Both the position numbers and the translations under genes were made by a program. Below are positions 8,560 through 39,293 of a stretch of 64,000 nucleotides of DNA, one piece after another; positions within the stretch are counted from its first letter, which is position 1, and each line of letters starts with the position of its first letter. Under the pieces are notes generated by a model. That model saw nothing but the letters and a program-made list of their open reading frames with translations, did no database searches and had not been told where the DNA came from. The stretch spans positions 62,001 through 126,000 of IMG/VR virus record IMGVR_UViG_3300011113_000640. One strand, 5' to 3'.

Positions 8560-8579
8560 AGGTTAGTGCGCACTAACCT
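8560..8579. repeat. Perfect 20-bp palindrome AGGTTAGTGCGCACTAACCT (copy 1 of 3)
   Basis: Self-complementary; related copies at 39004 and 39278. Confidence 0.85.
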
Positions 8580-9698
8580 TTAAAGCATGCTGTTGTTATT
8601 ATGCCATTGGAAAAAGTCGGGCAAGACCTGTTTGTTATTTGTATTTTTAAATTTGCTGAGAAAATCAACGGCGCCTGGGTAAAAATCCTCAATCAAAGAT
8701 TTATTAAATTGGCCATCCAAAAATTGTGGCAACAAATCCTGCAGGTCGCAACGCAGTAAGATTTTGGCTATTTCTATATTTTTAAAAGGTGTCCAGGTTG
8801 TGGTATTGCCAAGATGCCAATGTTGATGATCATTGACCAAATGATTGATAATTTGCCGGTTCAGATCATGTATCGTGGGATATTGATGTCGCAGTTGATG
8901 TCTTGTGTTCCACGATTCAGTCCAGAGATCGTGATATTTGCTAAAATGATAGTAATGATATTTGTCTTTGTTTTGTTCCAACAACTGGCCAAAATTGATG
9001 TCATGCCAACTTGTCAACATGGCGATGACCGCAGGACCACGTAAAAAATATTCATCCCCGCAACTGCCGGTGGCCAACCATGTGGGTTGATTCCAATGAT
9101 GTATCTGCCCATAGGCCCAAAATGATTTGAGAGTTTTATTGTTATGACAAGTGAACATATCATAGTCATAGTATTCGTGAGTGATCAACTCAAAATCAAT
9201 CCGATCTCGCATCAGCATGGCATACAACAACAAGGTATCAACTCCACCCGAACAAAACAATTTTAAATTTTGAATCTGCAGGCTCGATAATCGATCCAAT
9301 GACTGAGACAAATGATCGCCAACTCGTTCCTGAGCTTGTTGCAAGGTCAAGGGTTGATCGGGCACGGAATAATCAATTGGACGTTTGGTGACCAGCACAT
9401 TGCCTTCAAAATCAATCAGCAAATCATCATCGGCCCAGGCCTGTGTGCTGGCCGCATCACAAGGTAGATTTGTTGATATTCCTGCGCCGTGCCACAGCGG
9501 AAAACTTCTCGGAGTGCTGTGGTTGATTTTCACGCCAATTTCAGTCATTTGCAACGCACAATGATTGTCGTAGTAGCCCTTGGTCCACTGGTCTAGCGTG
9601 GGTCGTTGCCAACCATGGTCACAGTTGATCCATAGATTTCCGCACTGCCAATGGTTGGGAAATCTACTATCTTGTTGTTTGGTTATGCTAAAAAACAT
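8580..9698 (-). CDS. Asparagine-synthase-like / N-type ATP pyrophosphatase
   Basis: FCSGGVDT PP-loop and ATGSCGDEYF (cf. TGxGGDELF); no N-terminal Cys glutaminase domain. Confidence 0.6.
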   Translation of the reverse strand: MFFSITKQQDSRFPNHWQCGNLWINCDHGWQRPTLDQWTKGYYDNHCALQMTEIGVKINHSTPRSFPLWHGAGISTNLPCDAASTQAWADDDLLIDFEGNVLVTKRPIDYSVPDQPLTLQQAQERVGDHLSQSLDRLSSLQIQNLKLFCSGGVDTLLLYAMLMRDRIDFELITHEYYDYDMFTCHNNKTLKSFWAYGQIHHWNQPTWLATGSCGDEYFLRGPAVIAMLTSWHDINFGQLLEQNKDKYHYYHFSKYHDLWTESWNTRHQLRHQYPTIHDLNRQIINHLVNDHQHWHLGNTTTWTPFKNIEIAKILLRCDLQDLLPQFLDGQFNKSLIEDFYPGAVDFLSKFKNTNNKQVLPDFFQWHNNNSML

Positions 9699-9761
9699 TT
9701 GGTTTTTGGAAAAATCTTATGTATACATTGATAAGTATAACATAGTAATTATGAAAACACA

Positions 9762-11333
9762 ATGAGAAATCTAATAAACTTAATAGAAGCGGTGTTATTG
9801 ACCGAAAAAAGTCGCGGTTTATTGTATCGCGAAAAAGGTGATGGTTTTTTTCAAGGCAACAAGGACAACCCCACAGCCGAAATAGTGTTTGATCGGGTGG
9901 ATTATTTTCCCAGTCAGCCCGGTGCTTATGCCAACTATGAAGAAATGGCCGAAGCTGGACAAGAACTGTTTCGACAGTATCCCAATATCATCTGGAGCAA
10001 CAAACCTACCAACGCCAGCAAGGCCTTTGCTATTATAACTTTTGACGGCCCGGCCAAAGGACAAAAAACCTACTACGGTCGATTCTTTGGCGAAATCAAA
10101 CAAGACATGGCCGGACTTTGGAAGAACAATGAACTACCCGGCGGCTGGCAACTCAACAAACAAGTTAGCCTGAAAGGCAGTTACTACAAATTAAAACCTG
10201 TGGACCTGTTTCCTGTCAACAGTACATTTGCCACTCCGGCCGATGCAGTATCGGCCATGGGCTCCAGACCTGGAACCACCCCCGACGAATTGGCCAACAT
10301 TGACAAAATACGTCCTGGTATGGATCAGTTGCTGGGTGGAAAATTGCCTACATTTGAGAACGTAGGCGAAATGTCCACCGCAGTGCGTGATGATCTTGGC
10401 GAAACCATTGGTCCTATAGCTCTTGTTCAAGGTATGATCACCTCGGGTGGAGCAGAAGCTGCAAGAAAAGATATCTTAGGGCCACAAGGTTCATTCTCTG
10501 GCAGTGCCATAAACTTTCCAGCGGCTAAGAACAATGGCCTGGTAGACAGCTATTTGTTACATCCGTCGGGTGTGGAAATTGGTATCAGCTCTAAAGGTGA
10601 AAAAGGTGCTTCTGCATCAGTCAAAAACATTGCCGACGGTATTGTGGCGGCCAGAGACAAAGGCATGGACAAGTTGTTGAAACAATACGCACCACAAGTT
10701 GACGTAATTGAAAAAGTAGGAACCTTAGGATCTGTGGATTTTCCTTTAGTGTTTGGTATCGAGCAAGGCATCATTGATGACACCACCGCACAAACAATCA
10801 AACAGTTGATCAAGAGTGGTGCGACCTCTACAGACGATCCAGAAGTGTTGGCGTTGATGAAAGACATCAAGGCCAAAACTGACAATCCCAGATACAATGT
10901 CGGCTATCATGCTCTGGCTTCGTTGGCACGACGAGTAGCTGTCAACATCAACTCGGATCCCAAGTTTGGTGAAGCCTGCTTGAAATTTTTGAATACCAGC
11001 CCTATCATACAACTACATTTAAATGGTTCAGACAAGGCCGGCACTTACACTGTCACAGGGTTTACATCAAAGTATCCGCCTGACTTCAAAGGCACGGTGG
11101 GTTTGGATGCTGGCAAAGTTTATGCAGCCACGGGCACAATTGGTCGTGTGAGTTTTAGTTACAACGGTGGCGGAGACAAAGACACTGATGTTGAAGTAGA
11201 CGTTGCTCCAGCAAAAACCGCCGCAACCGATTTAGATGTAGTCACACAAAAACGCAGTGCTATCACAGCCGCTCCTGACGAGCCCAAGAAATACGGCACA
11301 GAAAAAACCCTGGGCCGTAAAAGACAACGATAA
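9762..11333 (+). CDS. Hypothetical protein, probably virion-internal; possible PD-(D/E)xK-like nuclease fold
   Basis: 523 aa; MRNLINLIE...LLTE N-terminus; LVDSY...GISSK motif. Confidence 0.55.
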   Translation: MRNLINLIEAVLLTEKSRGLLYREKGDGFFQGNKDNPTAEIVFDRVDYFPSQPGAYANYEEMAEAGQELFRQYPNIIWSNKPTNASKAFAIITFDGPAKGQKTYYGRFFGEIKQDMAGLWKNNELPGGWQLNKQVSLKGSYYKLKPVDLFPVNSTFATPADAVSAMGSRPGTTPDELANIDKIRPGMDQLLGGKLPTFENVGEMSTAVRDDLGETIGPIALVQGMITSGGAEAARKDILGPQGSFSGSAINFPAAKNNGLVDSYLLHPSGVEIGISSKGEKGASASVKNIADGIVAARDKGMDKLLKQYAPQVDVIEKVGTLGSVDFPLVFGIEQGIIDDTTAQTIKQLIKSGATSTDDPEVLALMKDIKAKTDNPRYNVGYHALASLARRVAVNINSDPKFGEACLKFLNTSPIIQLHLNGSDKAGTYTVTGFTSKYPPDFKGTVGLDAGKVYAATGTIGRVSFSYNGGGDKDTDVEVDVAPAKTAATDLDVVTQKRSAITAAPDEPKKYGTEKTLGRKRQR

Positions 11334-11912
11334 TTATTTTTTCAAGTCGCTGACATAGTCGCAGATTTTTAATTCCAAGGCTTCCTCTGCTGACAAGTAT
11401 ATGTCACTGGGTGGCAACAATTTTTCCAAGATGGTATCAGTGTCCAAGCCCGTGGCCGCCCGATAGTGTTCCAGCATGCGCCACTGTATGAGATTGTGCT
11501 CTTTGGCTATGGCAAATAGTTCATGATGCTTGCCTTCGTGGCTGTTGCTATACTGATGGCTTAGTATTGAAGTGTTGGGCGTTAGCACTCTACGTCCAGC
11601 GTGTCCGGCCAAGAATATCATGAGCCCGGCACTGGCTATCACTCCCAGGCCCACGGTCTTGATTGCGATGCTCGACGCTTTCATCACGTCGATCAAAGCA
11701 AAAGCATCTTCCACGCTGCCGCCTTCCGAACATACCATGAGTAAGAGCTCTTTTTTCTTTTTCTTTACCACATGATTTTCCACCAAGATCCATTCAATGA
11801 TGGGCTTGATGGTGTCATCGTTGACTTCGCCCATGAACACATACATGCCGGCTTCCTGCAACAGGCGGGATGGTTCTTTTTCTGAATTATCAGGTTCTTG
11901 TAGTATTGGCAT
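11334..11912 (-). CDS. clpP: ATP-dependent Clp protease proteolytic subunit (ClpP-like)
   Basis: SEGGSV, catalytic Ser in IASAG, His in SHQ, Asp in DIYLSAEEA. Confidence 0.85.
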   Translation of the reverse strand: MPILQEPDNSEKEPSRLLQEAGMYVFMGEVNDDTIKPIIEWILVENHVVKKKKKELLLMVCSEGGSVEDAFALIDVMKASSIAIKTVGLGVIASAGLMIFLAGHAGRRVLTPNTSILSHQYSNSHEGKHHELFAIAKEHNLIQWRMLEHYRAATGLDTDTILEKLLPPSDIYLSAEEALELKICDYVSDLKK

Positions 11913-11996
11913 TTTGGAGTTCTCTACGTATATTATAGCACAAGATTCTGGGCCACTCTAGTACTTATGATAATTCTGTTCAAACGATTTATTCAA

Positions 11997-12024
11997 AAGA
12001 AAACCCCCAATTTGGGGGTTTTTT
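11997..12024. terminator. Intrinsic terminator (bidirectional-type hairpin)
   Basis: AAAACCCCC-AATTT-GGGGGTTTT with flanking A/T tracts, after the 12043 gene. Confidence 0.75.
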
Positions 12025-12042
12025 GTATTACAAACTAGCAAA

Positions 12043-12309
12043 TTAGGCCGCTACTTTGGTGGCCTTTTCTACAGTTTTGGTGATTTCTTTTTGTGTTTCT
12101 TTGGCCACTGCTTCTACAGTTTCAGCAAACTCTTTCACAGCCTTGTTGGTTGTGCGGATCAAGCTGAACTGGGCATCTACCACAGTGTGAGCACTCTTAC
12201 GAACTTGCTCAGGCATGTAGGTAATCATTGTGGTGGCACCTTTGTGCATGTTGTCGATGGCAACAGTTACATCAAATAATTTTGCAAAGTCGATTTTGTT
12301 GAATTCCAT
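12043..12309 (-). CDS. Phasin-like small amphipathic helical protein
   Basis: 88 aa, A/K/E/T-rich helical pattern, AGGAG RBS, PhaR-like box upstream; family call is inference. Confidence 0.5.
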   Translation of the reverse strand: MEFNKIDFAKLFDVTVAIDNMHKGATTMITYMPEQVRKSAHTVVDAQFSLIRTTNKAVKEFAETVEAVAKETQKEITKTVEKATKVAA

Positions 12310-12360
12310 TTTGTTTTCTCCTATGTTGAAATGGGTTACTACTAAACTATTATATATGAA

Positions 12361-12377
12361 TATTTATTGCAGTGCAA
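12361..12377 (-). promoter_or_regulatory. TAAATA promoter abutting a PhaR-like TGC-N3-GCA box
   Basis: + strand TATTTA (12361-12366) followed immediately by TTGCAGTGCAA (12367-12377). Confidence 0.55.
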
Positions 12378-12467
12378 CAATTATTATATATCTATATTAC
12401 TCGTTTTTTAGATTTTGGCAAGATTGATTGCACAAACCCTATGGATAAATAATAAAAAGGATCAAAA

Positions 12468-13205
12468 ATGGCGTCTTACAACAACTACAGCGACAATTGG
12501 TATGTGACCGTAAATGGTGGAACTGGCACAGTTTATCTTGATGCCTCACTACAAGTAAATGGCAACATCACCTATGTCAGTCAGCTAGAGGTCAATGACG
12601 CTTTTATCATAGCAGCCGCCAACAACAGCAGCTCTGCCAATGTAACAGCCGTGGGCTTTTTGGCAGGCAAACCCACCACACCCATCAGCTATGCTGGAAT
12701 CCAATACAACGCCACAGCCGATGCCTGGCAAATATCCACCAATGTTTTTGCCAATGGCGTAGCCAACACAGCCTATGCCAATATCAGTACTTCAACATAC
12801 GGAAACACAAATGTTGTGGCCTTGTTATCGGCATTTGGTAGCAACACCATTTCAACTACCGGAACCATTAATTCCGGCAACATTGTAGCTCCCAATGTCA
12901 TTGTGGGCAACGTTACCACCAATCTAATAAGATCAGACGATTCTTCTTATCTAACTGTGCAAGATGGGTTGAATGTGGTTGGCGACGTTGAAGTATCGGG
13001 TAACATAACCGGTGGTAACACAATATCAGATTCAAGCATAACTCCTTCCAAAGCACTAGCCGACCTTACTGCTACAGATGGTGCACGGGCATTTGTAAAC
13101 GATGCTAACTTGGTGGCTGCAGGTAACTTTGGAAATCAGATCGGCAGTGGTGGATCAAATGTGGTGCCAGTCTGGTCGGATGGCTCCAACTGGTATATAG
13201 GCTAA
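12468..13205 (+). CDS. Structural protein sharing its C-terminal domain with the 2324 fibre
   Basis: Ends ...RAFVNDANLVAAGNFGNQIGSGGSNVVPVWSDGSNWYIG, nearly identical to the end of 2324..5587; TAAATA at 12446. Confidence 0.7.
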   Translation: MASYNNYSDNWYVTVNGGTGTVYLDASLQVNGNITYVSQLEVNDAFIIAAANNSSSANVTAVGFLAGKPTTPISYAGIQYNATADAWQISTNVFANGVANTAYANISTSTYGNTNVVALLSAFGSNTISTTGTINSGNIVAPNVIVGNVTTNLIRSDDSSYLTVQDGLNVVGDVEVSGNITGGNTISDSSITPSKALADLTATDGARAFVNDANLVAAGNFGNQIGSGGSNVVPVWSDGSNWYIG

Positions 13206-13918
13206 ACTGACTGTTCGCGTAGTGTGGCCAGTTTATAACGTTCCAGCAGTTTGATATAAGTCCAACCCAGGTCCCATTCCCATTTCTTCACGCTGAGTTT
13301 GGGACTAGCTGGATCTGCGTGATGATTGTTGTGCAATTCCTCGCCACCAATGAAAAATGCCCAAGGCACTATGTTGGTCGAATAGTCCTTGGTGGCTGTG
13401 TTTCTGTAGCCCCACCAGTGCCCCAGGCCGTTGATGACTCCGGCCGCAAACAAAGGTATCCAGATCATTTGCCAGCCCCAGGCCAACCATCCCCAGGCCC
13501 AGCCAAATATCATGCAATCAATAAAGAACATGATAACAATACCCAACCAGTTGAATCTTGTGTAGATGTTGCGTTCCATCCAGTCGTCAGGTGTGCCTAC
13601 TCCGTACTGTTCAACCATTTTTTTATCTTGTGCAGCCCAGGCATAGTAGAAAGCACCTCCCAGCAAGATCTGCCAGATTCCTTCATTTTGCGGGCTATGC
13701 GGATCACCTTCTTTGTCGGTAAATCTGTGATGTTTTCTATGAGTGGCCACCCACTGCCGAGTGACCATGCCTGTGGTCAGCCACAGCCAAAATCTCATGA
13801 AGTGTGCGACCCTGGGATCGAATGTGACTCCTCTATGTGCTTGACTGCGATGCAAATAAAGTGTGACACAGGCTATGGTGATGTGTGTCATCACCAGGAT
13901 GTAGATGAGTAGGCCCAT
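13202..13918 (-). CDS. Membrane fatty-acid (delta-9-type) desaturase
   Basis: His boxes HRSQAH, HRKHH, HNNHH; GDPHSP; GGEELHNNHH. Confidence 0.9.
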   Translation of the reverse strand: MGLLIYILVMTHITIACVTLYLHRSQAHRGVTFDPRVAHFMRFWLWLTTGMVTRQWVATHRKHHRFTDKEGDPHSPQNEGIWQILLGGAFYYAWAAQDKKMVEQYGVGTPDDWMERNIYTRFNWLGIVIMFFIDCMIFGWAWGWLAWGWQMIWIPLFAAGVINGLGHWWGYRNTATKDYSTNIVPWAFFIGGEELHNNHHADPASPKLSVKKWEWDLGWTYIKLLERYKLATLREQSV

Positions 13919-13925
13919 GTTTTAC

Positions 13926-14480
13926 TTAGCCAAAACTTTCCTGGAATGGCCGCCAGCTTTGTTGCAGAGCCATGTAAAACAAATTGCGTTGCCGTGTGAC
14001 CAGTTCTTGATTCAAGGTGATCCAGGTAGCAGGTGCCAGGGCAATCTTGGTTTCGCTGTCGCCACCTAGATCTCGTGGTTCCAGACCGTGTTTGTCACAC
14101 AGGTGCTTAATGGCTGCATTATGACCCAGGCAGTGCATGAACAGTTCGTTATAGCCACGATTTCTAGCCCAGACTATGCCTTGTGTGAGCAAGTCATCAC
14201 CGATGCCTAGGCCTCTATGATCGCGGTGCACTATGAGCCCAAATTCCACCTGCGCTTTGCTGATTTCGGCTATGTGCAAGGTGCCCAGCCAGCCCTCACA
14301 GTTGGCGGCTATCAGGAAAGCATGACCATTGGGCTCGGCTTCTATTCGTAGCATGAGGCTTTCTATGATGCCCACACCGGTGGTTCCAAAATACATGTGC
14401 TGGGTGTCGGCATCTTGCTCCTGCAACCATTCACCGTAGCGATGATATTTGTCAGGATCTAGAAATTGGGTGGTGTACAT
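13926..14480 (-). CDS. GNAT-family acetyltransferase
   Basis: VHRDHRGLGIG acetyl-CoA-binding motif A; WARNRG...HCLGHNAAI. Confidence 0.85.
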   Translation of the reverse strand: MYTTQFLDPDKYHRYGEWLQEQDADTQHMYFGTTGVGIIESLMLRIEAEPNGHAFLIAANCEGWLGTLHIAEISKAQVEFGLIVHRDHRGLGIGDDLLTQGIVWARNRGYNELFMHCLGHNAAIKHLCDKHGLEPRDLGGDSETKIALAPATWITLNQELVTRQRNLFYMALQQSWRPFQESFG

Positions 14481-14599
14481 TATTTTTTATACATGGCCTG
14501 TGCTCGTTGCACCTGTCCATTGCGTGCCAGATGTGCGGCATAACTGGCCTGTCCAAGATCGCACATGAATTGCCATACTGTTGATAAGATTGATTTCAT
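14480..14599 (-). CDS. Small protein (39 aa, MKSILSTVWQF...) heading the GNAT-desaturase operon
   Basis: Read manually; AAAGGA RBS; TAATG overlap with the GNAT start. Confidence 0.6.
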   Translation of the reverse strand: MKSILSTVWQFMCDLGQASYAAHLARNGQVQRAQAMYKK

Positions 14600-14671
14600 T
14601 ACATTTTCCTTTTGGGTTATTTTCGGACCCAGACTCTTGATCTGAGCTTCTCAGTGAAAACACTGACTTTG

Positions 14672-14696
14672 TATTTATATTGTGCAGTGCCACATA
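14672..14696 (-). promoter_or_regulatory. TAAATA promoter with adjacent PhaR-like box
   Basis: - strand reads TATGTGGCACTGCACAATA-TAAATA; same arrangement as at 12361. Confidence 0.5.
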
Positions 14697-14750
14697 ATAG
14701 CAAAACATAATGATCAAAAGGCAAATAAATATCCTACAAGGAGAACTACC

Positions 14751-14942
14751 ATGTTATCATTCTTAAAGAAAATTTTCGGAGCTAAACCTGCTGAGCCCAC
14801 TGCGGCGCCTTACAAGGTAGAAGAGCCCAGTCAGTTTCCGTTTCCTAAAACTGTCAAGGAAGAAAAGCCGTCTGTAAAGGCCAAAAAACCTGCAACCAAA
14901 AAACCCGCCGCTAAAAAAACTGCTAAAAAATCAGCTCAATAA
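14751..14942 (+). CDS. Small Lys/Ala/Pro-rich basic protein
   Basis: MLSFLKKIFG...KKPAAKKTAKK; AAGGAG RBS; TAAATA at 14726. Confidence 0.7.
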   Translation: MLSFLKKIFGAKPAEPTAAPYKVEEPSQFPFPKTVKEEKPSVKAKKPATKKPAAKKTAKKSAQ

Positions 14943-15221: not shown

Positions 15222-15391
15222 ACAGGACCACGCAAGAAATACATGGCACAATAGATCACAAATCCCGAGAACAGAATCAAGGCCAATGTTGCAGCCAACT
15301 CCATGCTATCAACATCACCGTCGATCTTGATCATGTGTGTGACAACAAACACACCAAATATCACTACAAGCAAAAAGACGCCGAAGGCCAT
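15218..15391 (-). CDS. Small membrane protein (57 aa)
   Basis: Read manually (MAFGVFLLVV...); coupled to both neighbours. Confidence 0.55.
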   Translation of the reverse strand: MAFGVFLLVVIFGVFVVTHMIKIDGDVDSMELAATLALILFSGFVIYCAMYFLRGPV

Positions 15392-16422: not shown

Positions 16423-16428
16423 GCATAC

Positions 16429-16457: not shown

Positions 16458-16459
16458 GG

Positions 16460-30930: not shown

Positions 30931-31599
30931 CTAATCATCACGATTGCCAAACAGTTGCAACAGGCTGACAAAAATGTTAATAAAGTTCATGTACAGGCTC
31001 AAAGCACCCAAGATCTCGGCCTTGCTGTCTGGTTCAAGAATGCTGACCTCTTGGCGGATACGTTGTGTGTCATAGGCAGTGAGACCCAAGAACACGATAA
31101 TAGCCACTGCACTCACAACCATGGCCAAGGTGCTACTGCCAATGAACACATTGACAACGCTGGCGATTACCACTGCAATCACACCTACCATCAAGAAACT
31201 GCCCCATCCTTCCAGGCTTTTCTTGGTAAAGTATCCCCACAAGCTCATGGTACCAAACAAGATGGTTGCGCCCATGAAAGCAGTGACTATACTGGTAGTA
31301 GTAAACGTAATGAATATGGTGCTCATGCTGAGACCCATCAAAGCCGCAAAGATATGTAGCATGCCCCGGGCTTCACCATAGGTGGCCTTTTCCATGATCC
31401 AGGTCATGGCAAAAATCATCACAAGGGGTGCAAAAATCACAATCCATTTCATGATACCAGTGAACAGAAATGCCATGAGTCCCGGACTTGACGCTACCAA
31501 TAGACTGACCAACATGCTGTTGACCACGGCCAAAAACATGTTGTTGTAGACCGAAATCATTCGGTTGTTGATATCACTCACACTTGCATAGGTATTCAT
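30931..31599 (-). CDS. Bax inhibitor-1 / YccA family membrane protein
   Basis: About 7 TM segments; GLTAYDTQRI; ALSLYMNFINIF. Confidence 0.9.
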   Translation of the reverse strand: MNTYASVSDINNRMISVYNNMFLAVVNSMLVSLLVASSPGLMAFLFTGIMKWIVIFAPLVMIFAMTWIMEKATYGEARGMLHIFAALMGLSMSTIFITFTTTSIVTAFMGATILFGTMSLWGYFTKKSLEGWGSFLMVGVIAVVIASVVNVFIGSSTLAMVVSAVAIIVFLGLTAYDTQRIRQEVSILEPDSKAEILGALSLYMNFINIFVSLLQLFGNRDD

Positions 31600-31608
31600 C
31601 GCTTCTCC

Positions 31609-33041: not shown

Positions 33042-33050
33042 GATCTTTCC

Positions 33051-33326
33051 TTATCGATAATCTTTGTTTAACTGTGCCCAAGTCATCCAGGACTTGAATG
33101 CATTATACACTGTTAGAGCCTCTGTGTCATCCTGTTCGACTTTGACACCACGCACCCAAAATCCTTCAGGGCTGACTCGCAACATTTCGGCTCCGCCGGC
33201 CAAGCAGGTTATGTTGTTCATAGGTAATTGAGAGCCGGGTGGTACTGCTCCATAAAGTGGATCCAATTTCATTTCTTCCATGATTCGATCATGAGCCTCT
33301 TGCCAATAATCGTGTTGTGTTTTCAT
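33051..33326 (-). CDS. Hypothetical protein
   Basis: 91 aa. Confidence 0.6.
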   Translation of the reverse strand: MKTQHDYWQEAHDRIMEEMKLDPLYGAVPPGSQLPMNNITCLAGGAEMLRVSPEGFWVRGVKVEQDDTEALTVYNAFKSWMTWAQLNKDYR

Positions 33327-33513
33327 GCCATGAACTGACGGATGCGTTTTAGGGCTTTTTCAATACGCCATTTGATATAGGCGATCCATTCCTTGGGATG
33401 TATCATTTATTCTCCAATCATGTCTGCAAACTTACGAACCAAAACCGCCATGACTATGGCAGCACCAATAATGCATACTGCTTCTACAAACCAGTTCTCT
33501 AGCATCCAACTCA

Positions 33514-34260
33514 TCATAACTTGTTTACCTTTACAAATAATTGATTATCACTGGGTAACTGCCAACCTGGATCAAAAATATGTGATATTTTTCCCTGCAA
33601 CAAATATAGAGTAATAATATTTCTTACGTTTTCGCCATCTGCATCATCAAAACAAATAACCGAGTTATTCTTTGCTGTATTAAGAATGTTACATAAATCT
33701 GCTTCGACACTACTTGCACTATGGTCACCATCAATATGATAACCATCAAAGTTGTTGTCAGCACAGAGATATATAGGCAATACTTCTCTTGAATCACCTG
33801 CTATCAAAGTAAATCTGTCGCCAAACGTTTTTTTCAAATACCTTGCACATGGTTGCACATAAGAATGATATCCTATGTCTACACTGACAACTTCAAGATT
33901 AGGATTTGACGATAACATAAGCAAGCTGCTGAATCCACAATTGAACCCAACTTCTAAAACACGAGTCTTAGATAATGCAAATAAAGCTATTCCTCTTCTT
34001 TTTTGTCTGGCAGACTGATCTAACTGTGGTGAAACAACTTCTTTGTTCAGATTGATCATTTCTAGACTATTATCAGTAAAAAATATGCTACCTTCTAGTT
34101 CTTCGCCTGAATCTTGAACAATCTTCAATAAAGCAGACACGTGTTCATTGTAAACATGTAAAAAAGGTTCATTGTAAGAACTATTGTCAGGATTTGACCA
34201 TTTGTCAAACTGTCTAAGAATATCATATCTTACTTTTAAAATATTATGATACATTGACAT
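33514..34260 (-). CDS. Class I SAM-dependent methyltransferase (Methyltransf_24-like)
   Basis: VLEVGFNCGFSS, GDSREVLP, HIDGDH, CFDD; AT-rich. Confidence 0.8.
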   Translation of the reverse strand: MSMYHNILKVRYDILRQFDKWSNPDNSSYNEPFLHVYNEHVSALLKIVQDSGEELEGSIFFTDNSLEMINLNKEVVSPQLDQSARQKRRGIALFALSKTRVLEVGFNCGFSSLLMLSSNPNLEVVSVDIGYHSYVQPCARYLKKTFGDRFTLIAGDSREVLPIYLCADNNFDGYHIDGDHSASSVEADLCNILNTAKNNSVICFDDADGENVRNIITLYLLQGKISHIFDPGWQLPSDNQLFVKVNKL

Positions 34261-34261
34261 T

Positions 34262-35626
34262 TTACAGTTTTTCTCCTTGTTCAAATCCACGGAAGCGGAC
34301 AAAGCGGGGGAACCTTAGGCTATAGGTTCCATCTTGATTTTGGGTGACAGCGTCTGCCGCAACCTCAACCACTCGGCCAAGTAGGTCATTTCGGGAATGC
34401 CAATATTCATCACGATCAGCATCGGAAAGGCCACTGCCCACATTAACACGAATATTACGATCATTATCATTTCCTTCGCATATTATAGCACCCAAACGCC
34501 CTTGATTGCGACCTGTGCCTTCTTCAAATCCTACAATATTTAAGTCCACGGTCATCACAGGTTTCCATTTCATCCAGAAACTCGACCGTTTGCACTCGTA
34601 GGGTGCACCTACGTCTTTGATCATGACGCCTTCAAAGCCTTGGGCCACAGCATCCTCGGCAAATCTGCGCATGACATCTTGTCCTTCTGCGGTGCCGAGA
34701 TCCACATCCATACCAGGCATGATTCGGAGATTTGTTTCGGCTTCGATCTCTTGTCGGTTGATCTCCAACATCAAAGTGCGTTTATGTTGTTGGGCATTCC
34801 AAAATCCACGCTCAAAGTCTGCCAACGGAATCACATCAAAAATATAGTAGTTCATGTCCTTGGTCTTGACATTGTCTTTTCGTTGCGCCTGTTTCATCAA
34901 GGCCTGGAAACTTTCGCCCACGATCTCACCATCCAGCACAAACGGACCTTTGGTCTCAAGACTGATGCGATGTTTGATTCGGTTCAGTTGTTCTTGGATA
35001 TCTGGAAAGTTTTCAAATATCTTACCGTTGCGACTGTACAAGGTCACACGGTTCTTGGTGCATAACGCCAGCACACGCACACCATCCAGCTTGCACTCTA
35101 TACGTTTGATGCCCTTCATCTTGTTGGCGTGATCATTGCTGTCTGTGGCCAATTGGCAAGTGAACACAGGAATCCTCCACTCGGTCTTGCCCAGGATCTT
35201 GTTGAGTGTTTTTTCACTGATACCACAGCGCAGGTCTTTGATGATGACTCTGCGGCACAGGCCATTCCACTCTTCGCTGTCAAACTGCTCACTCATGGCC
35301 AGGATGGCATCTCTAGCATCATGTCCAGTGACACTACGAGTCCGCAAACTTTCTAACAGTCCCCAGAATGCCGGCCAAGGGTTAGGCCTGCCTGTCAGCC
35401 CTTCGGTCTCTGGCACTTGACGCACACCAAACACATGGAAGGGATTATAGGCTTCATAGCAGTTGAACAAGAAACATTGAGCATTGGCACTGCCCAGCTT
35501 GGCAGCCATGAGTGCTTTTTCAATTACTTTTTCTTTGTGTATTCTGCTGTCACTGCTTTCGAGATCGCGGATCCAGTCTGCGGCCAATTTTAATCCTTGG
35601 AATTTGACATCTTGCATGACTATCAT
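34262..35626 (-). CDS. ATP-dependent DNA ligase
   Basis: KLDGVR, SRNGK, LDGEI, EGVMIK, WMKWK, VGSG, SLRFPRF. Confidence 0.95.
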   Translation of the reverse strand: MIVMQDVKFQGLKLAADWIRDLESSDSRIHKEKVIEKALMAAKLGSANAQCFLFNCYEAYNPFHVFGVRQVPETEGLTGRPNPWPAFWGLLESLRTRSVTGHDARDAILAMSEQFDSEEWNGLCRRVIIKDLRCGISEKTLNKILGKTEWRIPVFTCQLATDSNDHANKMKGIKRIECKLDGVRVLALCTKNRVTLYSRNGKIFENFPDIQEQLNRIKHRISLETKGPFVLDGEIVGESFQALMKQAQRKDNVKTKDMNYYIFDVIPLADFERGFWNAQQHKRTLMLEINRQEIEAETNLRIMPGMDVDLGTAEGQDVMRRFAEDAVAQGFEGVMIKDVGAPYECKRSSFWMKWKPVMTVDLNIVGFEEGTGRNQGRLGAIICEGNDNDRNIRVNVGSGLSDADRDEYWHSRNDLLGRVVEVAADAVTQNQDGTYSLRFPRFVRFRGFEQGEKL

Positions 35627-35663
35627 TATTTACTAGCTCCCAGTCAATACAAATGTTGATAGA

Positions 35664-36386
35664 TTAGTTGGCTTGCACAGTGTATTGTCCGATCACAGCA
35701 CCGGGTTTTTTCAAGGCCTCGGCTCGACGAGCCTTGTATTCTTCGTTGTCAACTTGGACCAGTCCAATGTTTTGGGTAGTACCATCTGGGCCTACCACGC
35801 TGATTGTTTCAGACTTTTTGTCTGTGGCTGGTGCCCGGTTTTGTTCTTTGGTCACGTTGTCTAATTCTTTGAATGCTTCAGGCGCACGAGCCGCGGCATC
35901 CTTGGCCGACTTCATGACATTCTTGTCGCCTATGGGCAGGGCTACCAACACATAGGTACGGATACGATTGCCTTCGGACACATGTTTCATTTCCACGGTT
36001 TCTACACCAGTGATGTCCACGTCGGGGCACATGCTACGCAAGGCCATTTCGCTTTGGTCAGTGCTGGAGTCTCCGCTGTCACTTCTAAACATCTTGACCT
36101 GGCTACGCACTTTGCCTCCGGCGGCTGTGCAAATCTTGGCATAGGCCATGCTCTTGGCCTTGATGTCGGCAAAGGCAAAGTCTCCGCTGGTGGCCGTGCC
36201 GTTTTCAAACACATAACCTGCGGCCTTGGGCAACTTGCTCATCCAAGGCGGTGCCTCTTTAATGGCTGACGCCATCTGTGCAGATTGCAGTCCATTGTCT
36301 GCACTGAACTGTTTACTGTAGTTTGGCGTTGAGCTACAGGCACTCAAGGCCAAAGTGATACCGGTTACGATTGCTAATTTTTTCAT
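35664..36386 (-). CDS. Lipoprotein (LPP20-like)
   Basis: Lipobox LSAC; PPW...G.ATS motif. Confidence 0.65.
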   Translation of the reverse strand: MKKLAIVTGITLALSACSSTPNYSKQFSADNGLQSAQMASAIKEAPPWMSKLPKAAGYVFENGTATSGDFAFADIKAKSMAYAKICTAAGGKVRSQVKMFRSDSGDSSTDQSEMALRSMCPDVDITGVETVEMKHVSEGNRIRTYVLVALPIGDKNVMKSAKDAAARAPEAFKELDNVTKEQNRAPATDKKSETISVVGPDGTTQNIGLVQVDNEEYKARRAEALKKPGAVIGQYTVQAN

Positions 36387-36418
36387 TTCCTACCTCTTCT
36401 TAGAGTTGCGATTAATAA

Positions 36419-36447
36419 AGTATAGCACAAATGCTACCATTTGTCAA
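36419..36447 (-). promoter_or_regulatory. Sigma70-like promoter
   Basis: TTGACA-17 bp-TATACT. Confidence 0.75.
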
Positions 36448-36997
36448 CTACACGCCATTGTGAACCATGCGACAAGCATATGATGCCTTGATACTGTCCA
36501 AGATCCTGTTTGCGATATGTGGGCTCAATGAACCAACGGCACTGGGCACCAAGATATCTAAAGGTCTTGGGAAAGTTTGGATGGACTCGGACTTCGCTTT
36601 CACGCACAGTGTCGCCAATGCGAACATTACGGACCTGTATTTCTGGACGCTCGTCGCAGACCATGTTGGTCTCCACAGTGAGATTTTTGGCTGTAGCTCG
36701 ACTCACAACCTGTACTCGTCCAGAATCCATGGCCTGGCGGCACAGCTCGGCTTCGGTGACTGTTCTGGGTGCGGTCTTTTCGCCTTCGCCCGAAATCCAC
36801 TCATTGTCGATCAAGGCTCTGAATGTGACTATGCACTTGTGGTGGGTGTTTGATACCGGCACAGCCAAGGTCTGTACATCAGTGATCCTGGCAATGCTGG
36901 CCTGTTGTTGTGTGGTCATGGCCTGCCGCACATAGCACTGTGCCATGACAGAGTTGGTCACGGCCAACCCCAAGATCAACGCTGTAGTGCGGAGCAT
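36434..36997 (-). CDS. Secreted Cys-containing hypothetical protein
   Basis: Signal peptide; six Cys. Confidence 0.65.
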   Translation of the reverse strand: MLRTTALILGLAVTNSVMAQCYVRQAMTTQQQASIARITDVQTLAVPVSNTHHKCIVTFRALIDNEWISGEGEKTAPRTVTEAELCRQAMDSGRVQVVSRATAKNLTVETNMVCDERPEIQVRNVRIGDTVRESEVRVHPNFPKTFRYLGAQCRWFIEPTYRKQDLGQYQGIICLSHGSQWRVVDKW

Positions 36998-37251
36998 GAT
37001 GCTCTTAGACTCCATAGGTTATTTTTCAAACGAGTGTAGTATTGACGATAAGATTGGGTGAGTTGATCAGGTTTGGAGCCAAAGTAGGCATGGAATTCGT
37101 CAATGCGTGACTTTAAATACACCGCCTGTGACTGTGCCTGGCCACAATCGGGTCGCAGGTTGTCAAAATCTGAAATGTCATAGCCGGGCTTGGTAGGGTG
37201 TGAAGCACAGCCAACCAACAACATCACAGCAACAAAAAACAACTGTCTCAT
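36976..37251 (-). CDS. Small lipoprotein
   Basis: Lipobox LVGC. Confidence 0.65.
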   Translation of the reverse strand: MRQLFFVAVMLLVGCASHPTKPGYDISDFDNLRPDCGQAQSQAVYLKSRIDEFHAYFGSKPDQLTQSYRQYYTRLKNNLWSLRASCSALQR

Positions 37252-37424
37252 AGTTCAGCAGTATTTTGCTGTTGATGACGGTATTCTCTTTTGAGCCAAT
37301 ACTTGTACATGCGGAAATAGGTTGCGGCATCGCAGGTAGGAAAACCATAGGCGTTGGCTTCGTCCTTGTGATCCATGTAGATGCGTTGTAACCAAATTTG
37401 AAATGGACTGTCAGAACGTTTCAT
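37248..37424 (-). CDS. Small hypothetical protein (58 aa)
   Basis: Read manually (MKRSDSPFQIWLQ...YKYWLKREY); ATGA overlaps on both sides. Confidence 0.6.
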   Translation of the reverse strand: MKRSDSPFQIWLQRIYMDHKDEANAYGFPTCDAATYFRMYKYWLKREYRHQQQNTAEL

Positions 37425-37657
37425 TTCATCTCCATGATCCGCTTGATTGCGGCTGTAGCTTCAGGAAAGCCTTGCCGCTCACGACTGCTGACCACGGCTT
37501 CAATTAATTCCATCTGTGTTTCATGCAAGCCGCCCACAAAAGTCATGATCTGATCACGGGTCAAGGTCATTTTGATATTGCCCAAGATCTGACGTTTGCG
37601 ATTGGCACTTGGCCGTTCTTCATAATCATCTTCAAACACGATTCTTCTCCTGTTCAA
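37421..37657 (-). CDS. Hypothetical protein
   Basis: 78 aa. Confidence 0.55.
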   Translation of the reverse strand: MNRRRIVFEDDYEERPSANRKRQILGNIKMTLTRDQIMTFVGGLHETQMELIEAVVSSRERQGFPEATAAIKRIMEMK

Positions 37658-37765
37658 TTTGTTTCAGCAGGTCTGCAATAAATCTCTTGGCCAGTTCGCT
37701 CCAGATAGAGCTGTCTATGATATGGAATCCAGCTTGTCTGGCAATCTCACGAATCTGCTGTTCGG

Positions 37766-37918
37766 TCACACGGTCTCCTCATCACAGTCTCTGGCAAAGA
37801 TACGAGCCACATCTTCCTGGGTCACATAGTCTTTGAAATAGATATAAGTTTCATCCTGGGTGCGACCACGGGCCTGCCATTGCATGATTTCTATTTCGAT
37901 GTCTTTGTAGAATCCCAT
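37766..37918 (-). CDS. Small hypothetical protein
   Basis: MGFYKD start with GGAG RBS. Confidence 0.55.
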   Translation of the reverse strand: MGFYKDIEIEIMQWQARGRTQDETYIYFKDYVTQEDVARIFARDCDEETV

Positions 37919-38229
37919 TATGCCATCTCCCCATAGGCTTGTGCATCCAGGTCGGCTGACCATTCAGCGTACTCTCGTGGATCAATCACTTCGGGTTCGT
38001 CATCAATGACCCAACCGGCCTCACGTAATTCTGCACGGCCCGATTCGGTCTTCTTCATGGCATCCAAAGCGGCATGGATACCGTTGATCTGGGCTACCAA
38101 GAACTCACGATCACGCCACTGCTCAGGAGTGGCACCACGTGGACGCCACCCGTGAAAATCCTTGTGGAAATCGCTGTAATAGCTCTGCAAGTCTTCTACC
38201 GATAAATCTGCAAAATCGCTGTGTGCCAT
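37918..38229 (-). CDS. Hypothetical early protein
   Basis: YSDFHKDFHGWRPR motif; AGGAG RBS; promoter upstream. Confidence 0.7.
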   Translation of the reverse strand: MAHSDFADLSVEDLQSYYSDFHKDFHGWRPRGATPEQWRDREFLVAQINGIHAALDAMKKTESGRAELREAGWVIDDEPEVIDPREYAEWSADLDAQAYGEMA

Positions 38230-38257
38230 GCTATGCTCCTTTATTGTTTATAATACT

Positions 38258-38286
38258 ATTATAACAAATGGGCCTTTTTTGGTCAA
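38258..38286 (-). promoter_or_regulatory. Sigma70-like early promoter
   Basis: TTGACC-17 bp-TATAAT. Confidence 0.8.
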
Positions 38287-38549
38287 TCCCACGACTTTTT
38301 GTCGCCATACTGCTCGTTGTAGTCGTAACCGGCTAGATATTCAGCAATTTCAGCTTCATTGAGCTCAGTGACCTGCTTGCCGTGCCCAGTGCCTTCTGGC
38401 CAGTAGTGCGGATCACGGGGACGACCATAATATGAATCTGCACTGCCACGGTCAAACAGGCCACCGTGCAGTTTGCGATCAAACTGCGGGCCACGCAAGG
38501 CCTGGACGATTTGTTCTTGTTCTGTGGGTTCTAACATTCCTATATACAT
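38283..38549 (-). CDS. Hypothetical early protein
   Basis: HGGLFDRGSADSYYGR...PHY...EYLAGY; AGGAG RBS. Confidence 0.7.
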   Translation of the reverse strand: MYIGMLEPTEQEQIVQALRGPQFDRKLHGGLFDRGSADSYYGRPRDPHYWPEGTGHGKQVTELNEAEIAEYLAGYDYNEQYGDKKSWD

Positions 38550-38578
38550 TATTGCTCCTAATTTCTAACTATACATAC

Positions 38579-38607
38579 ATTATAACCGAAATGCCTTTAT
38601 TGGTCAA
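38579..38607 (-). promoter_or_regulatory. Sigma70-like early promoter
   Basis: TTGACC-17 bp-TATAAT. Confidence 0.8.
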
Positions 38608-38954
38608 CCATTACCACATAAACGGTCTACACGTGGTTGTATCTTGTACACAAATTCATCCACGCTATTTTCAGCCCAAACATGCAAACGGTAATCAGCT
38701 ACAGCCAATCTAAAATAGGCTATAGAGTCATCGCGGTCACAGGTTGTAAACATTCGATAAAAAAAATCATGACACATTTTCTTATAGGTGTCATTGATTT
38801 CATCAAGACTTTCGAAATACCTTGCCAATTCTAGTAGATCAGTGTCCAGGTTCCTCAGATCCAATTGATCACTGAGATCCAACTGTTGAAAATCCGGACT
38901 CCGGTGCAATGCCAGTATTTTTTGTGCCGATTCGCTTAGTAAGTATTCTCTCAT
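38604..38954 (-). CDS. Hypothetical protein flanked by a 12-bp direct repeat
   Basis: 116 aa; TGGTCAACCATT at 38601 and 38971. Confidence 0.55.
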   Translation of the reverse strand: MREYLLSESAQKILALHRSPDFQQLDLSDQLDLRNLDTDLLELARYFESLDEINDTYKKMCHDFFYRMFTTCDRDDSIAYFRLAVADYRLHVWAENSVDEFVYKIQPRVDRLCGNG

Positions 38955-39003
38955 ATGTCTTTAATTAGCATGGTCAACCATTGTCCCGGACTTAGGATTT
39001 ATT

Positions 39004-39021
39004 GGTTAGTGAACACTAACC
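39004..39021. repeat. Palindrome GGTTAGTG-AA-CACTAACC (copy 2)
   Basis: Same arms as the copy at 8560. Confidence 0.85.
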
Positions 39022-39053
39022 TACCCTGGTTGGCGCCGGGTCGGAGATAATGA

Positions 39054-39209
39054 CTATATGTTACAGGCCGAAAAGAAACGGTCCTGATCGAATCTCTGAT
39101 TTGCTTCTTTGCAGGCACTGGCCACTGCAACTGCGGCCTGGAGACGAGCATGGGGATCCATGATTGAATTGATATACTTGGCGAGTAGTTCGAAATGTTT
39201 CTTGGACAT
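39054..39209 (-). CDS. Small early protein (51 aa, MSKKHFELLA...RFDQDRFFSAC)
   Basis: Read manually; AGGAG RBS and its own promoter. Confidence 0.7.
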   Translation of the reverse strand: MSKKHFELLAKYINSIMDPHARLQAAVAVASACKEANQRFDQDRFFSACNI

Positions 39210-39240
39210 ACTGTGGCTCCTTTTGATTAACTATACTGCT

Positions 39241-39269
39241 ATTATACAAAAAGGACAGTTTTTGGTCAA
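39241..39269 (-). promoter_or_regulatory. Sigma70-like early promoter
   Basis: TTGACC-17 bp-TATAAT. Confidence 0.8.
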
Positions 39270-39277
39270 CCGCCAAA

Positions 39278-39293
39278 GTTAGTGAGCACTAAC
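39278..39293. repeat. Palindrome GTTAGTG-AG-CACTAAC (copy 3)
   Basis: Same arms as the copies at 8560 and 39004. Confidence 0.85.

What the first reader, a model, noticed from the sequence alone, without database searches (positions are those of the whole stretch)
8560..39293. Repeated palindrome GTTAGTG-N2-CACTAAC just upstream of early -35 elements (PeSL-like element or operator)
Seen: three copies (8560-8579, 39004-39021, 39278-39293) with invariant arms and a variable 2-nt centre. Each lies 8-26 bp upstream of a TTGACC on the - strand and shortly after the stop codon of the preceding gene. Known: promoter-plus-stem-loop (PeSL) elements flank mobile early genes in some T4-like phages. Inference: arms conserved in sequence, not just in pairing, suggest a dimeric protein binding site (regulator, recombinase or DNA-entry/packaging signal) rather than a plain terminator.
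Basis: partly seen in the sequence, partly recalled or inferred. Interest (0 to 1): 0.6.

Follow-up and report, generated by a model that had tools for sequence, protein, structure and literature searches.

The report
Conserved operator-like dyad in early-promoter cassettes
A 16-22 bp palindrome sits at fixed helical-turn distances upstream of early promoters in an uncultured freshwater jumbo phage and dozens of its relatives, and behaves like the binding site of an unidentified dimeric protein rather than a terminator.

Summary
GTTAGTG-NN-CACTAAC occurs three times in the window (8562-8577, 39005-39020, 39278-39293) and five times in the 320-kb phage genome. It is the only recurrent short palindrome there. 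Every copy lies 8, 18 or 27 nt upstream of a TTGACC/TTGACA -35 box on the minus strand.

The phage is an uncultured freshwater jumbo phage of the T4 superfamily, distantly related to Atu_ph07, Phosso and Rak2-like phages. Dozens of related contigs carry the same dyad.
- Arms are invariant and the centre is free.
- Flanks are symmetric: TAR...YTA.
- No variant is compensatory.
- Spacing to the -35 box is quantised at about 10.5-bp steps (about 8, 18, 28, 38 nt; Rayleigh p about 2e-10).
- Canonical terminators co-occur with the dyad on either side of it.

So the dyad is not a terminator. It is most likely a DNA site for a dimeric protein acting with RNA polymerase. The architecture is PeSL-like: cassette indels and synteny breaks fall at the dyad or -35 box, and both forms of one cassette exist in lake metagenomes.

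No binder was found. The phage lacks recognisable HTH, RHH, TetR, ParB or recombinase genes. The same dyad also occurs in unrelated freshwater phages, as arrays or embedded in coding sequence, which points to a shared and possibly host-encoded factor.

The parts
8560..8579 (.). Dyad copy 1: core 8562-8577 (centre CG), extended to a perfect 20-bp palindrome
8515..8543 (-). Sigma70-type promoter TTGACC-N17-TATACT, 18 nt downstream of dyad 1 (dyad centre at about -61.5)
8096..8485 (-). 129-aa ORFan expressed from that promoter, behind a conserved leader and AAGGAG
8580..9698 (-). 372-aa ORFan whose TAA stop lies 2 nt before dyad 1. It is absent at this position in relatives L078 and L105, whose homology starts 6 nt upstream of the dyad
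39278..39293 (.). Dyad copy 3 (centre AG)
39241..39269 (-). Promoter TTGACC-N17-TATAAT (11 of 12 matches), 8 nt downstream of dyad 3 (dyad centre at about -51.5)
39054..39209 (-). 51-aa ORF flanked by dyads 3 and 2 (weak match to phrog_19432, function unknown)
39296..39517 (-). 73-aa ORF whose TAA stop lies 2 nt before dyad 3. A lake contig (run X3) lacks 39310-39499
39005..39020 (.). Dyad copy 2 (centre AA). The best-supported population variants fall on the two centre bases 39012 and 39013
38972..38977 (-). -35 box TTGACC 27 nt downstream of dyad 2. The -10 box is degenerate here (half PeSL). In relatives L088, L119 and L055 the same dyad and spacer lead into a full promoter
38613..38982 (-). 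370-bp cassette carrying ORF 38604-38954. It is bounded by the exact 12-nt direct repeat TGGTCAACCATT (38601-38612 and 38971-38982), which contains the -35 box. It is absent in relative L088 and in contigs of lake runs X3 and X5
38579..38607 (-). Promoter of the same family (11 of 12 matches) driving the widely conserved 88-aa gene 38283-38549. In relatives this promoter directly follows dyad 2

Best explanation
The three copies are instances of a conserved DNA dyad with core GTTAGTG-NN-CACTAAC and extended consensus TAR-GTTAGTG-NN-CACTAAC-YTA. It is most likely the binding site of a dimeric sequence-specific DNA-binding protein, which has not been identified.

The dyad forms the upstream module of PeSL-like early-gene cassettes: dyad, sigma70-type promoter, conserved leader, Shine-Dalgarno sequence, small ORF. 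It sits on one face of the helix relative to the -35 box. The dyad centre lies near -51, -61, -72 or -82, assuming a transcription start 7 nt after the -10 box. The bound protein would therefore touch or obstruct RNA polymerase at the adjacent promoter, in the manner of a class-I-type activator or of a repressor of upstream contacts. The same modules are the points at which cassettes are gained, lost and swapped between related phages.

Shown: occurrence, sequence conservation, lack of covariation, phasing, coexistence with true terminators, and indel junctions.
Inferred: that a protein binds, that it acts on transcription, and the sign of that effect.
For: - All 5 genomic copies, plus a decayed sixth, lie upstream of intergenic TTGACN-N17-TAnnnT promoters on the coding strand. 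The genome has about 40 such promoters among about 400 genes.
- In G000 plus 79 related IMG/VR loci, 80 of 92 exact dyads have such a promoter within 60 nt. The exceptions are mostly one coding context, a GIY-YIG gene.
- Across 43 independent contexts the gaps cluster at 5-9, 16-20, 27-30 and 38 nt. Only one falls at 10-15 nt and none at 21-26 nt. Rayleigh R is 0.75 at 10.5-11 bp (p about 2e-10), and 0 of 20,000 uniform nulls reach it.
- Upstream of 334 promoters there are 55 exact sites, 7 with one mismatch, 1 with two and 2 with three. All variants break a pair and none is compensatory.
- The flanks are symmetric (A at -2 and T at +2, each 45 of 63) but do not covary: 21 Watson-Crick pairs at the +/-1 flank against 26 expected under independence.
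- The centre dinucleotide is free, and natural variants hit exactly 39012 and 39013.
- The hairpin energy is -7.6 to -11 kcal/mol with no U-tract. Real terminators in the same genome reach -13 to -16.5 with U-tracts, and the terminator scan does not call the dyads.
- Canonical terminators lie beside the dyad, either before it (L073, L090, L116, L068) or between it and the -35 box (L109, L118, L072, L122, L040, L095).
- The identical 16-mer is a paired operator next to TetR-family genes in Leifsonia, Agromyces and Streptomyces, which shows it is a workable HTH-dimer site.
- Cassette junctions fall at the dyad or -35 box.
Against: - No binder was found. G000 has no match to TetR_N, HTH_3, HTH_17, RHH_1, Sigma70_r4, WhiB or ParB_N.
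- No host regulon was seen in 400 genomes of one candidate order.
- The promoters are already near consensus, so an activator is not obviously needed.
- Centres near -51 are unusual for classical class I activation.
- Within one orthologous cluster the gap drifts between 25, 26 and 27 nt.
- Contexts may share ancestry, so the phasing p-value is optimistic.
- Part of the spacing classes could reflect inserted modules (a T-tract of about 10 nt, a terminator of about 20 nt) rather than a helical constraint.
- In other phage groups the dyad lies inside genes with no promoter nearby, so its core function need not be transcriptional.
- No RNA data exist.
Confidence: 0.55

Rival explanations
1. The dyad is a target for a recombination-promoting protein (a nuclease or recombination helper). 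Its role would be to make cassette boundaries recombine, as Arbiol et al. speculated for PeSL stems. Promoter proximity would then be incidental to cassette structure.
For: - Synteny breaks fall exactly at the dyad edges. At genome site 70562, homology to L078 and L105 starts 6 nt upstream of the dyad. At site 40722, homology ends at dyad -1 and restarts at dyad +6, and L066 and L089 share only the dyad plus promoter.
- ORF cassettes flanked by dyads and promoters are polymorphic in lakes.
- The clade carries GIY-YIG genes.
- The geometry (invariant arms, free 2-bp centre) resembles serine-recombinase crossover sites (my own knowledge).
Against: - G000 has no Resolvase or Phage_integrase domain.
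- The one junction resolved to the base lies in the 12-nt repeat that contains the -35 box, not in the dyad.
- This model does not explain the 10.5-bp phasing to the -35 box.
- Ordinary T4-type homologous recombination on a 16-60 bp identity would give the same junctions without a dedicated protein.
Confidence: 0.15
2. The dyad binds a factor whose job is not promoter control, for example genome organisation, replication, packaging or protection. It sits by promoters only because intergenic space in this compact genome is promoter space, and because it travels with the cassettes.
For: The same dyad occurs in unrelated freshwater phages in other contexts:
- Single arrays of 4-8 copies, 24-33 bp apart, next to terminase genes. 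One is a 96%-complete 35.8-kb genome with 7 copies in one array.
- Three copies at the left end of a complete 68-kb genome.
- Copies embedded in SNF2 helicase and DNA polymerase A genes, coding KLVxTNL, with synonymous-site constraint.
- No shared phage protein was detected between these groups and the jumbo clade.
Against: Only about 10% of gene junctions in G000 carry a promoter, yet all dyads do. The helical phasing is unexplained by this model. The dyad remains next to the promoter even when a terminator is also present.
Confidence: 0.15
3. The dyad acts as an RNA hairpin in early polycistronic transcripts: a processing or stability signal, an attenuator, or a weak factor-dependent terminator recognised by a sequence-specific RNA-binding protein.
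For: - It follows stop codons closely.
- It folds at -7.6 to -11 kcal/mol.
- PeSL stems act as terminators in RB49.
- The most tolerated arm change, C10 to T, keeps a G.U pair or lies in the effective tetraloop.
- In other phages the dyad lies within mRNAs.
Against: - There are no compensatory changes, and all arm variants break pairs.
- The flanks do not covary.
- There is no U-tract.
- In L073, L090, L116 and L068 the dyad lies after a canonical terminator, so it would rarely be transcribed.
- Phasing to a DNA element is unexplained.
- No Rfam family matches.
Confidence: 0.1
4. There is no function. The palindrome is a passenger copied along with a duplicated promoter cassette.
For: The promoters belong to one family with a conserved spacer and leader, so cassette duplication is plausible.
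Against: The spacer between dyad and -35 box, the dyad centre and the adjacent genes have diverged to unrelated sequence, while the 14 arm bases stay invariant in more than 40 contexts from phages whose proteins are 30-90% identical. The dyad also recurs in unrelated phage groups.
Confidence: 0.03

Closest known systems
PeSL (promoter-early stem-loop) cassettes of T4-type phages RB49/phi1, T4/PST and KVP40/nt-1 (PMC2839356, PMC4122927)
   Same: A stem-loop-capable sequence lies just upstream of a near-consensus sigma70-type early promoter, a Shine-Dalgarno sequence and ATG. The modules repeat between small ORFan genes. Indels and replacements between relatives fall at these modules, and half elements occur. 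The authors themselves speculated that the stem might bind a protein.
   Different: Known PeSL stems are G/C-rich, terminator-like and loosely conserved (GGGG..CCCC, or A3-4G3..C3T3-4), and act as terminators. Here the stem is an A/T-rich sequence-invariant dyad without a U-tract. It coexists with separate terminators, is helically phased to the -35 box, marks only about 5 of about 40 promoters, and recurs in unrelated phages.
Class I activator sites such as CRP at -61.5, -72.5 and -82.5, and phage late-activator dyads such as P2 Ogr TGT-N12-ACA near -55 (my own knowledge, not tested here)
   Same: A dyad for a dimer lies upstream of the -35 box, at positions separated by whole helical turns on one face of the DNA.
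   Different: The promoters here already have consensus -35 and -10 boxes. A large class is centred near -51. No CRP/FNR-type or zinc-finger activator was identified.
TetR-family operators in Microbacteriaceae and Streptomyces
   Same: The identical 16-mer occurs there, paired in divergent promoter regions next to TetR genes.
   Different: There the sites overlap the promoters of one local operon in high-GC bacteria. The phage and the array-bearing phages encode no TetR domain. With 185,000 genomes scanned, identity of one operator type may be a look-elsewhere coincidence.
Dispersed operators of phage or plasmid global regulators: P1 C1 sites, cluster-A mycobacteriophage stoperators, RK2 KorB OB sites (my own knowledge)
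   Same: One short site is repeated at many promoters or intergenic positions of a large replicon.
   Different: Those systems have known binders encoded by the element. Stoperators are asymmetric and oriented. No ParB_N/KorB-like gene is present here.

Membership tests
PeSL cassette | Stem-loop-capable sequence immediately upstream of a sigma70-like promoter in an intergenic region, followed by a Shine-Dalgarno sequence and ATG | tested here: met
PeSL cassette | Repeated among small non-conserved ORFs, and located at indel or replacement junctions between related genomes | tested here: met
   ORFans. Junctions:
PeSL cassette | The stem-loop is an effective terminator (G/C-rich stem, T-run) | tested here: not met
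   By sequence criteria only: weak A/T-rich stem, no U-tract, and separate terminators alongside. Actual termination cannot be measured here
PeSL cassette | Mini-circle formation between neighbouring elements | not testable with these tools
   Needs inverse PCR on infected cells. Only the deleted and undeleted linear forms were seen
Intrinsic (Rho-independent) terminator | Stable G/C-rich hairpin directly followed by a U-tract | tested here: not met
Operator of a dimeric DNA-binding protein | Dyad symmetry with sequence-invariant half-sites, a free centre, and no compensatory evolution | tested here: met
Operator of a dimeric DNA-binding protein | Fixed rotational position relative to the promoter | tested here: met
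   Caveat: the contexts are not fully independent
Operator of a dimeric DNA-binding protein | An identified cognate binding protein | tested here: inconclusive
   No known DNA-binding Pfam domain was found in G000. Only 25 of the 56 families matched among 148 small proteins could be read. No protein is shared with other dyad-bearing phages
TetR operator | A TetR-family regulator encoded nearby or in the same genome | tested here: not met
ParB/KorB-type site (parS or OB) | A ParB_N-domain protein in the replicon | tested here: not met
Site-specific recombination site | A serine or tyrosine recombinase in the genome, with crossover inside the site | tested here: not met
   The resolved junction lies in the -35 repeat
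Known RNA family | Match to an Rfam covariance model | tested here: not met

The most novel reading that the evidence does not exclude
One trans-acting factor, most simply a host protein of a still unknown freshwater bacterium, recognises the 22-bp dyad TAR-GTTAGTG-NN-CACTAAC-YTA. At least three unrelated phage lineages have independently recruited its site:
- Jumbo T4-superfamily phages carry it as a helically phased upstream element of early-promoter cassettes.
- Phages of about 36 kb carry it as a 7-site array next to the terminase genes.
- Phages of 65-80 kb write it into the coding sequence of their SNF2 helicase and DNA polymerase A genes (KLVxTNL), held by synonymous-site selection.
Probability: 0.35. 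Interest if true: 0.8.

Novelty: new variant of a known kind. Interest (0 to 1): 0.62.

Why it matters
PeSLs have been treated as terminator-plus-promoter linkers that shuffle genes in T4-type phages. Here the stem position is occupied by something else: a sequence-invariant, helically phased dyad with the hallmarks of an operator, while ordinary terminators sit beside it.

That points to an unrecognised regulator of host-polymerase-dependent early transcription in a widespread clade of lake jumbo phages. The clade was found in runs from 14 freshwater studies.

It also gives a concrete 22-bp probe for fishing out the binder, and possibly for identifying the host. Reuse of the same site by unrelated phages, even inside coding sequence, would be a rare case of convergent recruitment of one DNA-binding factor.

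Tried and rejected
Identifying the phage and its relatives
- Megablast and tblastn of window segments against cultured phages found nothing for the local ORFans.
- Cultured relatives located through the DNA polymerase (Phosso, Atu_ph07, a Vibrio phage, XbC2) carry no dyad.

Literature
- A search for the two half-sites returned only unrelated hits.

Looking for a binder
- The genes beside the dyads have no family assignment.
- G000 has no TetR_N, WhiB, HTH_3, Sigma70_r4, HTH_17, RHH_1, Resolvase, Phage_integrase or ParB_N.
- A batch Pfam scan of 148 small proteins showed mainly metabolic genes plus one Hc1 histone-like hit. Only 25 of 56 matched families were visible. The second batch of 100 was not run.
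- phmmer, and 74 clade-derived profile HMMs, found no protein shared between the jumbo clade and unrelated dyad-bearing contigs. One weak hit turned out to be a Bax1-I membrane protein, so it was noise.

Host regulon
- The dyad is absent from 400 other genomes of the order of a MAG that holds an array contig. Within that MAG and a second one, it is confined to the short phage-like contig.
- Other host groups were not sampled.

Chi-like half-site idea
- Rejected. Outside the dyads, GTTAGTG occurs 10 and 6 times on the two strands, against about 20 expected.

RNA evidence
- No RNA run holds the region. The reads laid were DNA contigs only.

Correction of an earlier view
- I first took the SNF2 and GIY-YIG coding occurrences for chance hits. 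The SNF2 case was revised after the synonymous-site test.


Full report
**1. The observation**

The pattern GTTAGTG-NN-CACTAAC has three exact matches in the window: 8562-8577, 39005-39020 and 39278-39293. Dinucleotide-preserving shuffles give a mean of 0.27 matches even with two mismatches allowed, and none of 100 shuffles reached three.

The window is bases 62001-126000 of a 320,541-bp virus record with 46% G+C. Genome-wide there are five exact copies and none of the reversed control. GTTAGTG is the only 7-nt arm that forms three or more short-loop perfect palindromes in the whole genome.

Seen on the minus strand, which is the coding strand here, every copy precedes a -35 box. The gaps are 8, 8, 18, 27 and 8 nt in genome order, and 18, 27 and 8 nt for the three window copies. 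Four of the five lead into near-consensus TTGACN-N17-TATAAT promoters, followed by a conserved leader, AAGGAG and a start codon. The copy at 39005 has only the -35 box and a poor -10 box. A sixth, decayed copy with two arm mismatches precedes another promoter near genome position 300318. It is exact in relative L101.

**2. What the phage is**

The DNA polymerase and portal protein are T4-like. The nearest cultured relatives by polymerase are Sinorhizobium phage Phosso (49% identity), Agrobacterium phage Atu_ph07 (45%) and Rak2-like jumbo phages (about 42%). None of four such genomes contains the dyad. Near-identical DNA is found in runs from 14 freshwater, lake and river studies, and in no RNA run.

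**3. Relatives carry the same element**

My estimate of the chance expectation is 10-20. Of these, 79 share at least one protein with this genome. They are fragments of a large, diverse clade of related freshwater phages, several on contigs of 220-357 kb.

In this clade plus the genome there are 92 exact dyads, and 80 have a sigma70-type promoter within 60 nt downstream. Most of the exceptions are one coding context, a GIY-YIG gene.

**4. Not a terminator and not an RNA-pairing element**

- The hairpins fold at only -7.6 to -11 kcal/mol and have no U-tract. Five canonical terminators that precede other promoters in the same genome fold at -13 to -16.5 kcal/mol with U-tracts. The terminator scan does not call the dyads.
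- In relatives, a canonical terminator and the dyad occur together in both orders. The order is terminator, dyad, promoter in L073, L090, L116 and L068. It is dyad, terminator, promoter in L109, L118, L072, L122, L040 and L095.
- Upstream of 334 promoters, 55 sites are exact, 7 have one mismatch, 1 has two and 2 have three. Every variant breaks a pair or gives a wobble, and none is compensatory.
- The flanks extend the symmetry to TAR...YTA (A at -2 and T at +2, each in 45 of 63 contexts). The two sides vary independently: 21 Watson-Crick pairs at the +/-1 flank against 26 expected.
- The centre dinucleotide is free, with a preference for CC, GG and CG.
- In lake populations, the best-supported variants in this stretch are at 39012 and 39013, exactly the centre of the 39005 copy. 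The arms show none among the listed variants.
- No Rfam family matches.

**5. Helical phasing**

The sites were grouped into 43 contexts by promoter and downstream sequence. The gaps from dyad to -35 box are:

| Gap (nt) | 5 | 6 | 7 | 8 | 9 | 11 | 16 | 17 | 18 | 19 | 20 | 27 | 29 | 30 | 38 | 44 | 49 |
|---|---|---|---|---|---|---|---|---|---|---|---|---|---|---|---|---|---|
| Contexts | 2 | 1 | 3 | 5 | 1 | 1 | 1 | 8 | 7 | 1 | 2 | 3 | 2 | 2 | 2 | 1 | 1 |

Within the searched range of 5-30 nt, the Rayleigh statistic is 0.75 at a period of 10.5-11 bp (p about 2e-10). None of 20,000 uniform random sets reached it. The spacers within a class are unrelated in sequence. The 27-30 and 38 classes include cases where the spacer is a terminator hairpin.

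Assuming a transcription start 7 nt after the -10 box, the dyad centre falls near -51, -61, -72 and -82.

Caveats:
- The contexts are not fully independent.
- One orthologous group drifts between 25 and 27 nt.
- Module lengths could contribute to the spacing classes.

**6. PeSL-like cassette behaviour**

The layout matches published PeSLs: a stem-loop just upstream of a sigma70-like early promoter, a Shine-Dalgarno sequence and ATG, concentrated among ORFans and at indel junctions. The neighbouring genes here have no family assignment.

- Against relative L088 (about 92% identical), this genome has an extra cassette. It is bounded by the exact 12-nt direct repeat TGGTCAACCATT at 38601-38612 and 38971-38982, 370 nt apart, and this repeat contains the -35 box.
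- Contigs from lake runs X3 and X5 run from 38612 straight into the sequence at 38983. Both forms therefore exist in nature.
- Another lake contig lacks 39310-39499, which is most of the 73-aa ORF next to dyad 3.
- At genome site 70562 (window 8562), homology to L078 and L105 begins 6 nt upstream of the dyad, and the 372-aa upstream gene is not shared.
- At genome site 40722, homology to three relatives ends one base before the dyad and restarts six bases after it. Two other relatives share only the dyad plus promoter.

**7. Who binds?**

This remains unresolved.

- The genome has no match to TetR_N, WhiB, HTH_3, Sigma70_r4, HTH_17, RHH_1, ParB_N, Resolvase or Phage_integrase.
- A scan of all reference genomes for two adjacent copies found mainly Leifsonia, Agromyces and Streptomyces loci. 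There two copies lie in a divergent promoter region beside a TetR-family gene. This shows the 16-mer is a workable operator for an HTH dimer. Given the size of the search it may be no more than that.
- The dyad is absent from 400 genomes of the order of one MAG that carries an array contig. In that MAG and a second one it occurs only on the short phage-like contig.

**8. The same dyad in unrelated phages**

- *Arrays.* Several small contigs carry arrays of 4-8 copies, 24-33 bp apart, between a small ORF and the terminase genes. A 96%-complete 35.8-kb genome has seven copies in one array and no TetR or ParB domain.
- *Coding contexts.* A scan for the 22-mer consensus, with no promoter requirement, returned 79 loci against about 4 expected by my estimate. 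About 50 lie in an SNF2-family helicase gene and about 11 in a DNA polymerase A gene. In both genes the dyad reads KLVxTNL. One 52-kb contig has it in both genes.
- *Synonymous constraint.* An unbiased set of 66 unique SNF2 homologues was gathered by peptide patterns elsewhere in the protein. The dyad is exact in 36 and one mismatch off in 25. The four- and six-fold degenerate codons inside the dyad use a single codon in 94-98% of sequences. Only 10% of 165 comparable codons reach 95%. That gives roughly p = 0.001 for a pre-specified position.
- *Other features.* Complete 65-80-kb genomes of this group hold one to three dyads, and one genome has three at its left end.
- *No shared protein.* Neither phmmer nor 74 clade-derived profile HMMs detect a protein shared between these groups and the jumbo clade.

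This pattern is most simply explained by a common trans-acting factor, possibly host-encoded. That is inference.

**9. Verdict**

I commit to a DNA operator for a dimeric protein that is rotationally coupled to the adjacent early promoter, set in cassettes that recombine at these modules (confidence about 0.55).

The main rivals are:
- a recombination-helper target (0.15);
- a factor site with a non-transcriptional role (0.15);
- an RNA hairpin (0.10).

Relative to known PeSLs this is a new variant. The cross-lineage reuse of the dyad is the most novel and least certain part.

Noticed in passing
L012:1108-1305; L108:8710-8875; L115:6605-6815; L107:179-360; L034:2703-2890; also L024, L035, L128, L159, L189, L192, L204, L208, L231, L234: Unrelated small phage contigs carry arrays of 4-8 copies of the same dyad, 24-33 bp apart, between a small ORF and the terminase genes. 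One is a 96%-complete 35.8-kb genome. Some copies flank or overlap TTGAC boxes. The arrays could be a pac/cos-like, partition, origin or multi-operator region.
   Followed up: partly
L047:3226-3241 within ORF 2882-4219; L182:1742-1757 within ORF 963-2885; both on the contig of L228: In abundant 65-80-kb freshwater phages the dyad is embedded in frame (KLVFTNL or KLVDTNL) in an SNF2 helicase gene and a DNA polymerase A gene. In 66 unique SNF2 homologues the degenerate codons inside the dyad are almost fixed (94-98%), against 10% of comparable codons elsewhere.
   Followed up: partly
L133:4313-4354; L138:1017-1059; about 30 further loci L123-L162: The identical 16-mer occurs as a pair of operators in divergent promoter regions beside TetR-family genes in Leifsonia, Agromyces, Cryobacterium, Streptomyces and Actinomadura. 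In Leifsonia the neighbouring gene is an acyl-CoA carboxylase subunit.
   Followed up: partly
L050:6298-6313 within ORF 6200-6565; also L036, L053, L067, L094, L112: A GIY-YIG endonuclease gene of the jumbo clade contains the exact dyad in its coding sequence (..YMLVNTN..). In L073, L090 and L116 a gene with the same N-terminal leader sequence sits directly behind a dyad-promoter module.
   Followed up: partly
window 8515-8543, 38258-38286, 38579-38607, 39241-39269; genome-wide list: The early promoters form a family with a conserved spacer (roughly A-rich, then CC, then ATTTG before the -10 box, with partial inverted symmetry) and a conserved leader (TATAGT-TAA..AAAGGAGC). This family is shared across the clade and could hold a second regulatory site.
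   Followed up: no
genome 51150-51240 (L164:4150-4240), minus strand: Downstream of the dyad-bearing promoter at genome 51271 lies a leader of about 100 nt with a long A/T-rich inverted repeat (..GCCAATTT..AAATTGGC..) before the 357-aa ORF. It is conserved in L008 and L074.
   Followed up: no
window 39510-39531 (-): A canonical intrinsic terminator (9-bp stem, T-run) lies just upstream of the 73-aa ORF. This shows that the phage uses ordinary terminators in the same region.
   Followed up: yes
genome-wide; e.g. window 30931-31599 (Bax1-I), window 11334-11912 (ClpP), L163:18447-18884 (rubrerythrin): The genome carries many auxiliary genes: PhoH, NifU, Fe-S assembly, rubrerythrin/ferritin, Fe/Mn superoxide dismutase, ClpP and ClpS, IF-1, ThyX, a fatty-acid desaturase, Bax1-I, and an Hc1 histone-like protein. 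The rubrerythrin is 84% identical to one on L087, a contig of the SNF2-dyad phage group, which hints at a shared gene pool or host.
   Followed up: partly
   Followed up: no
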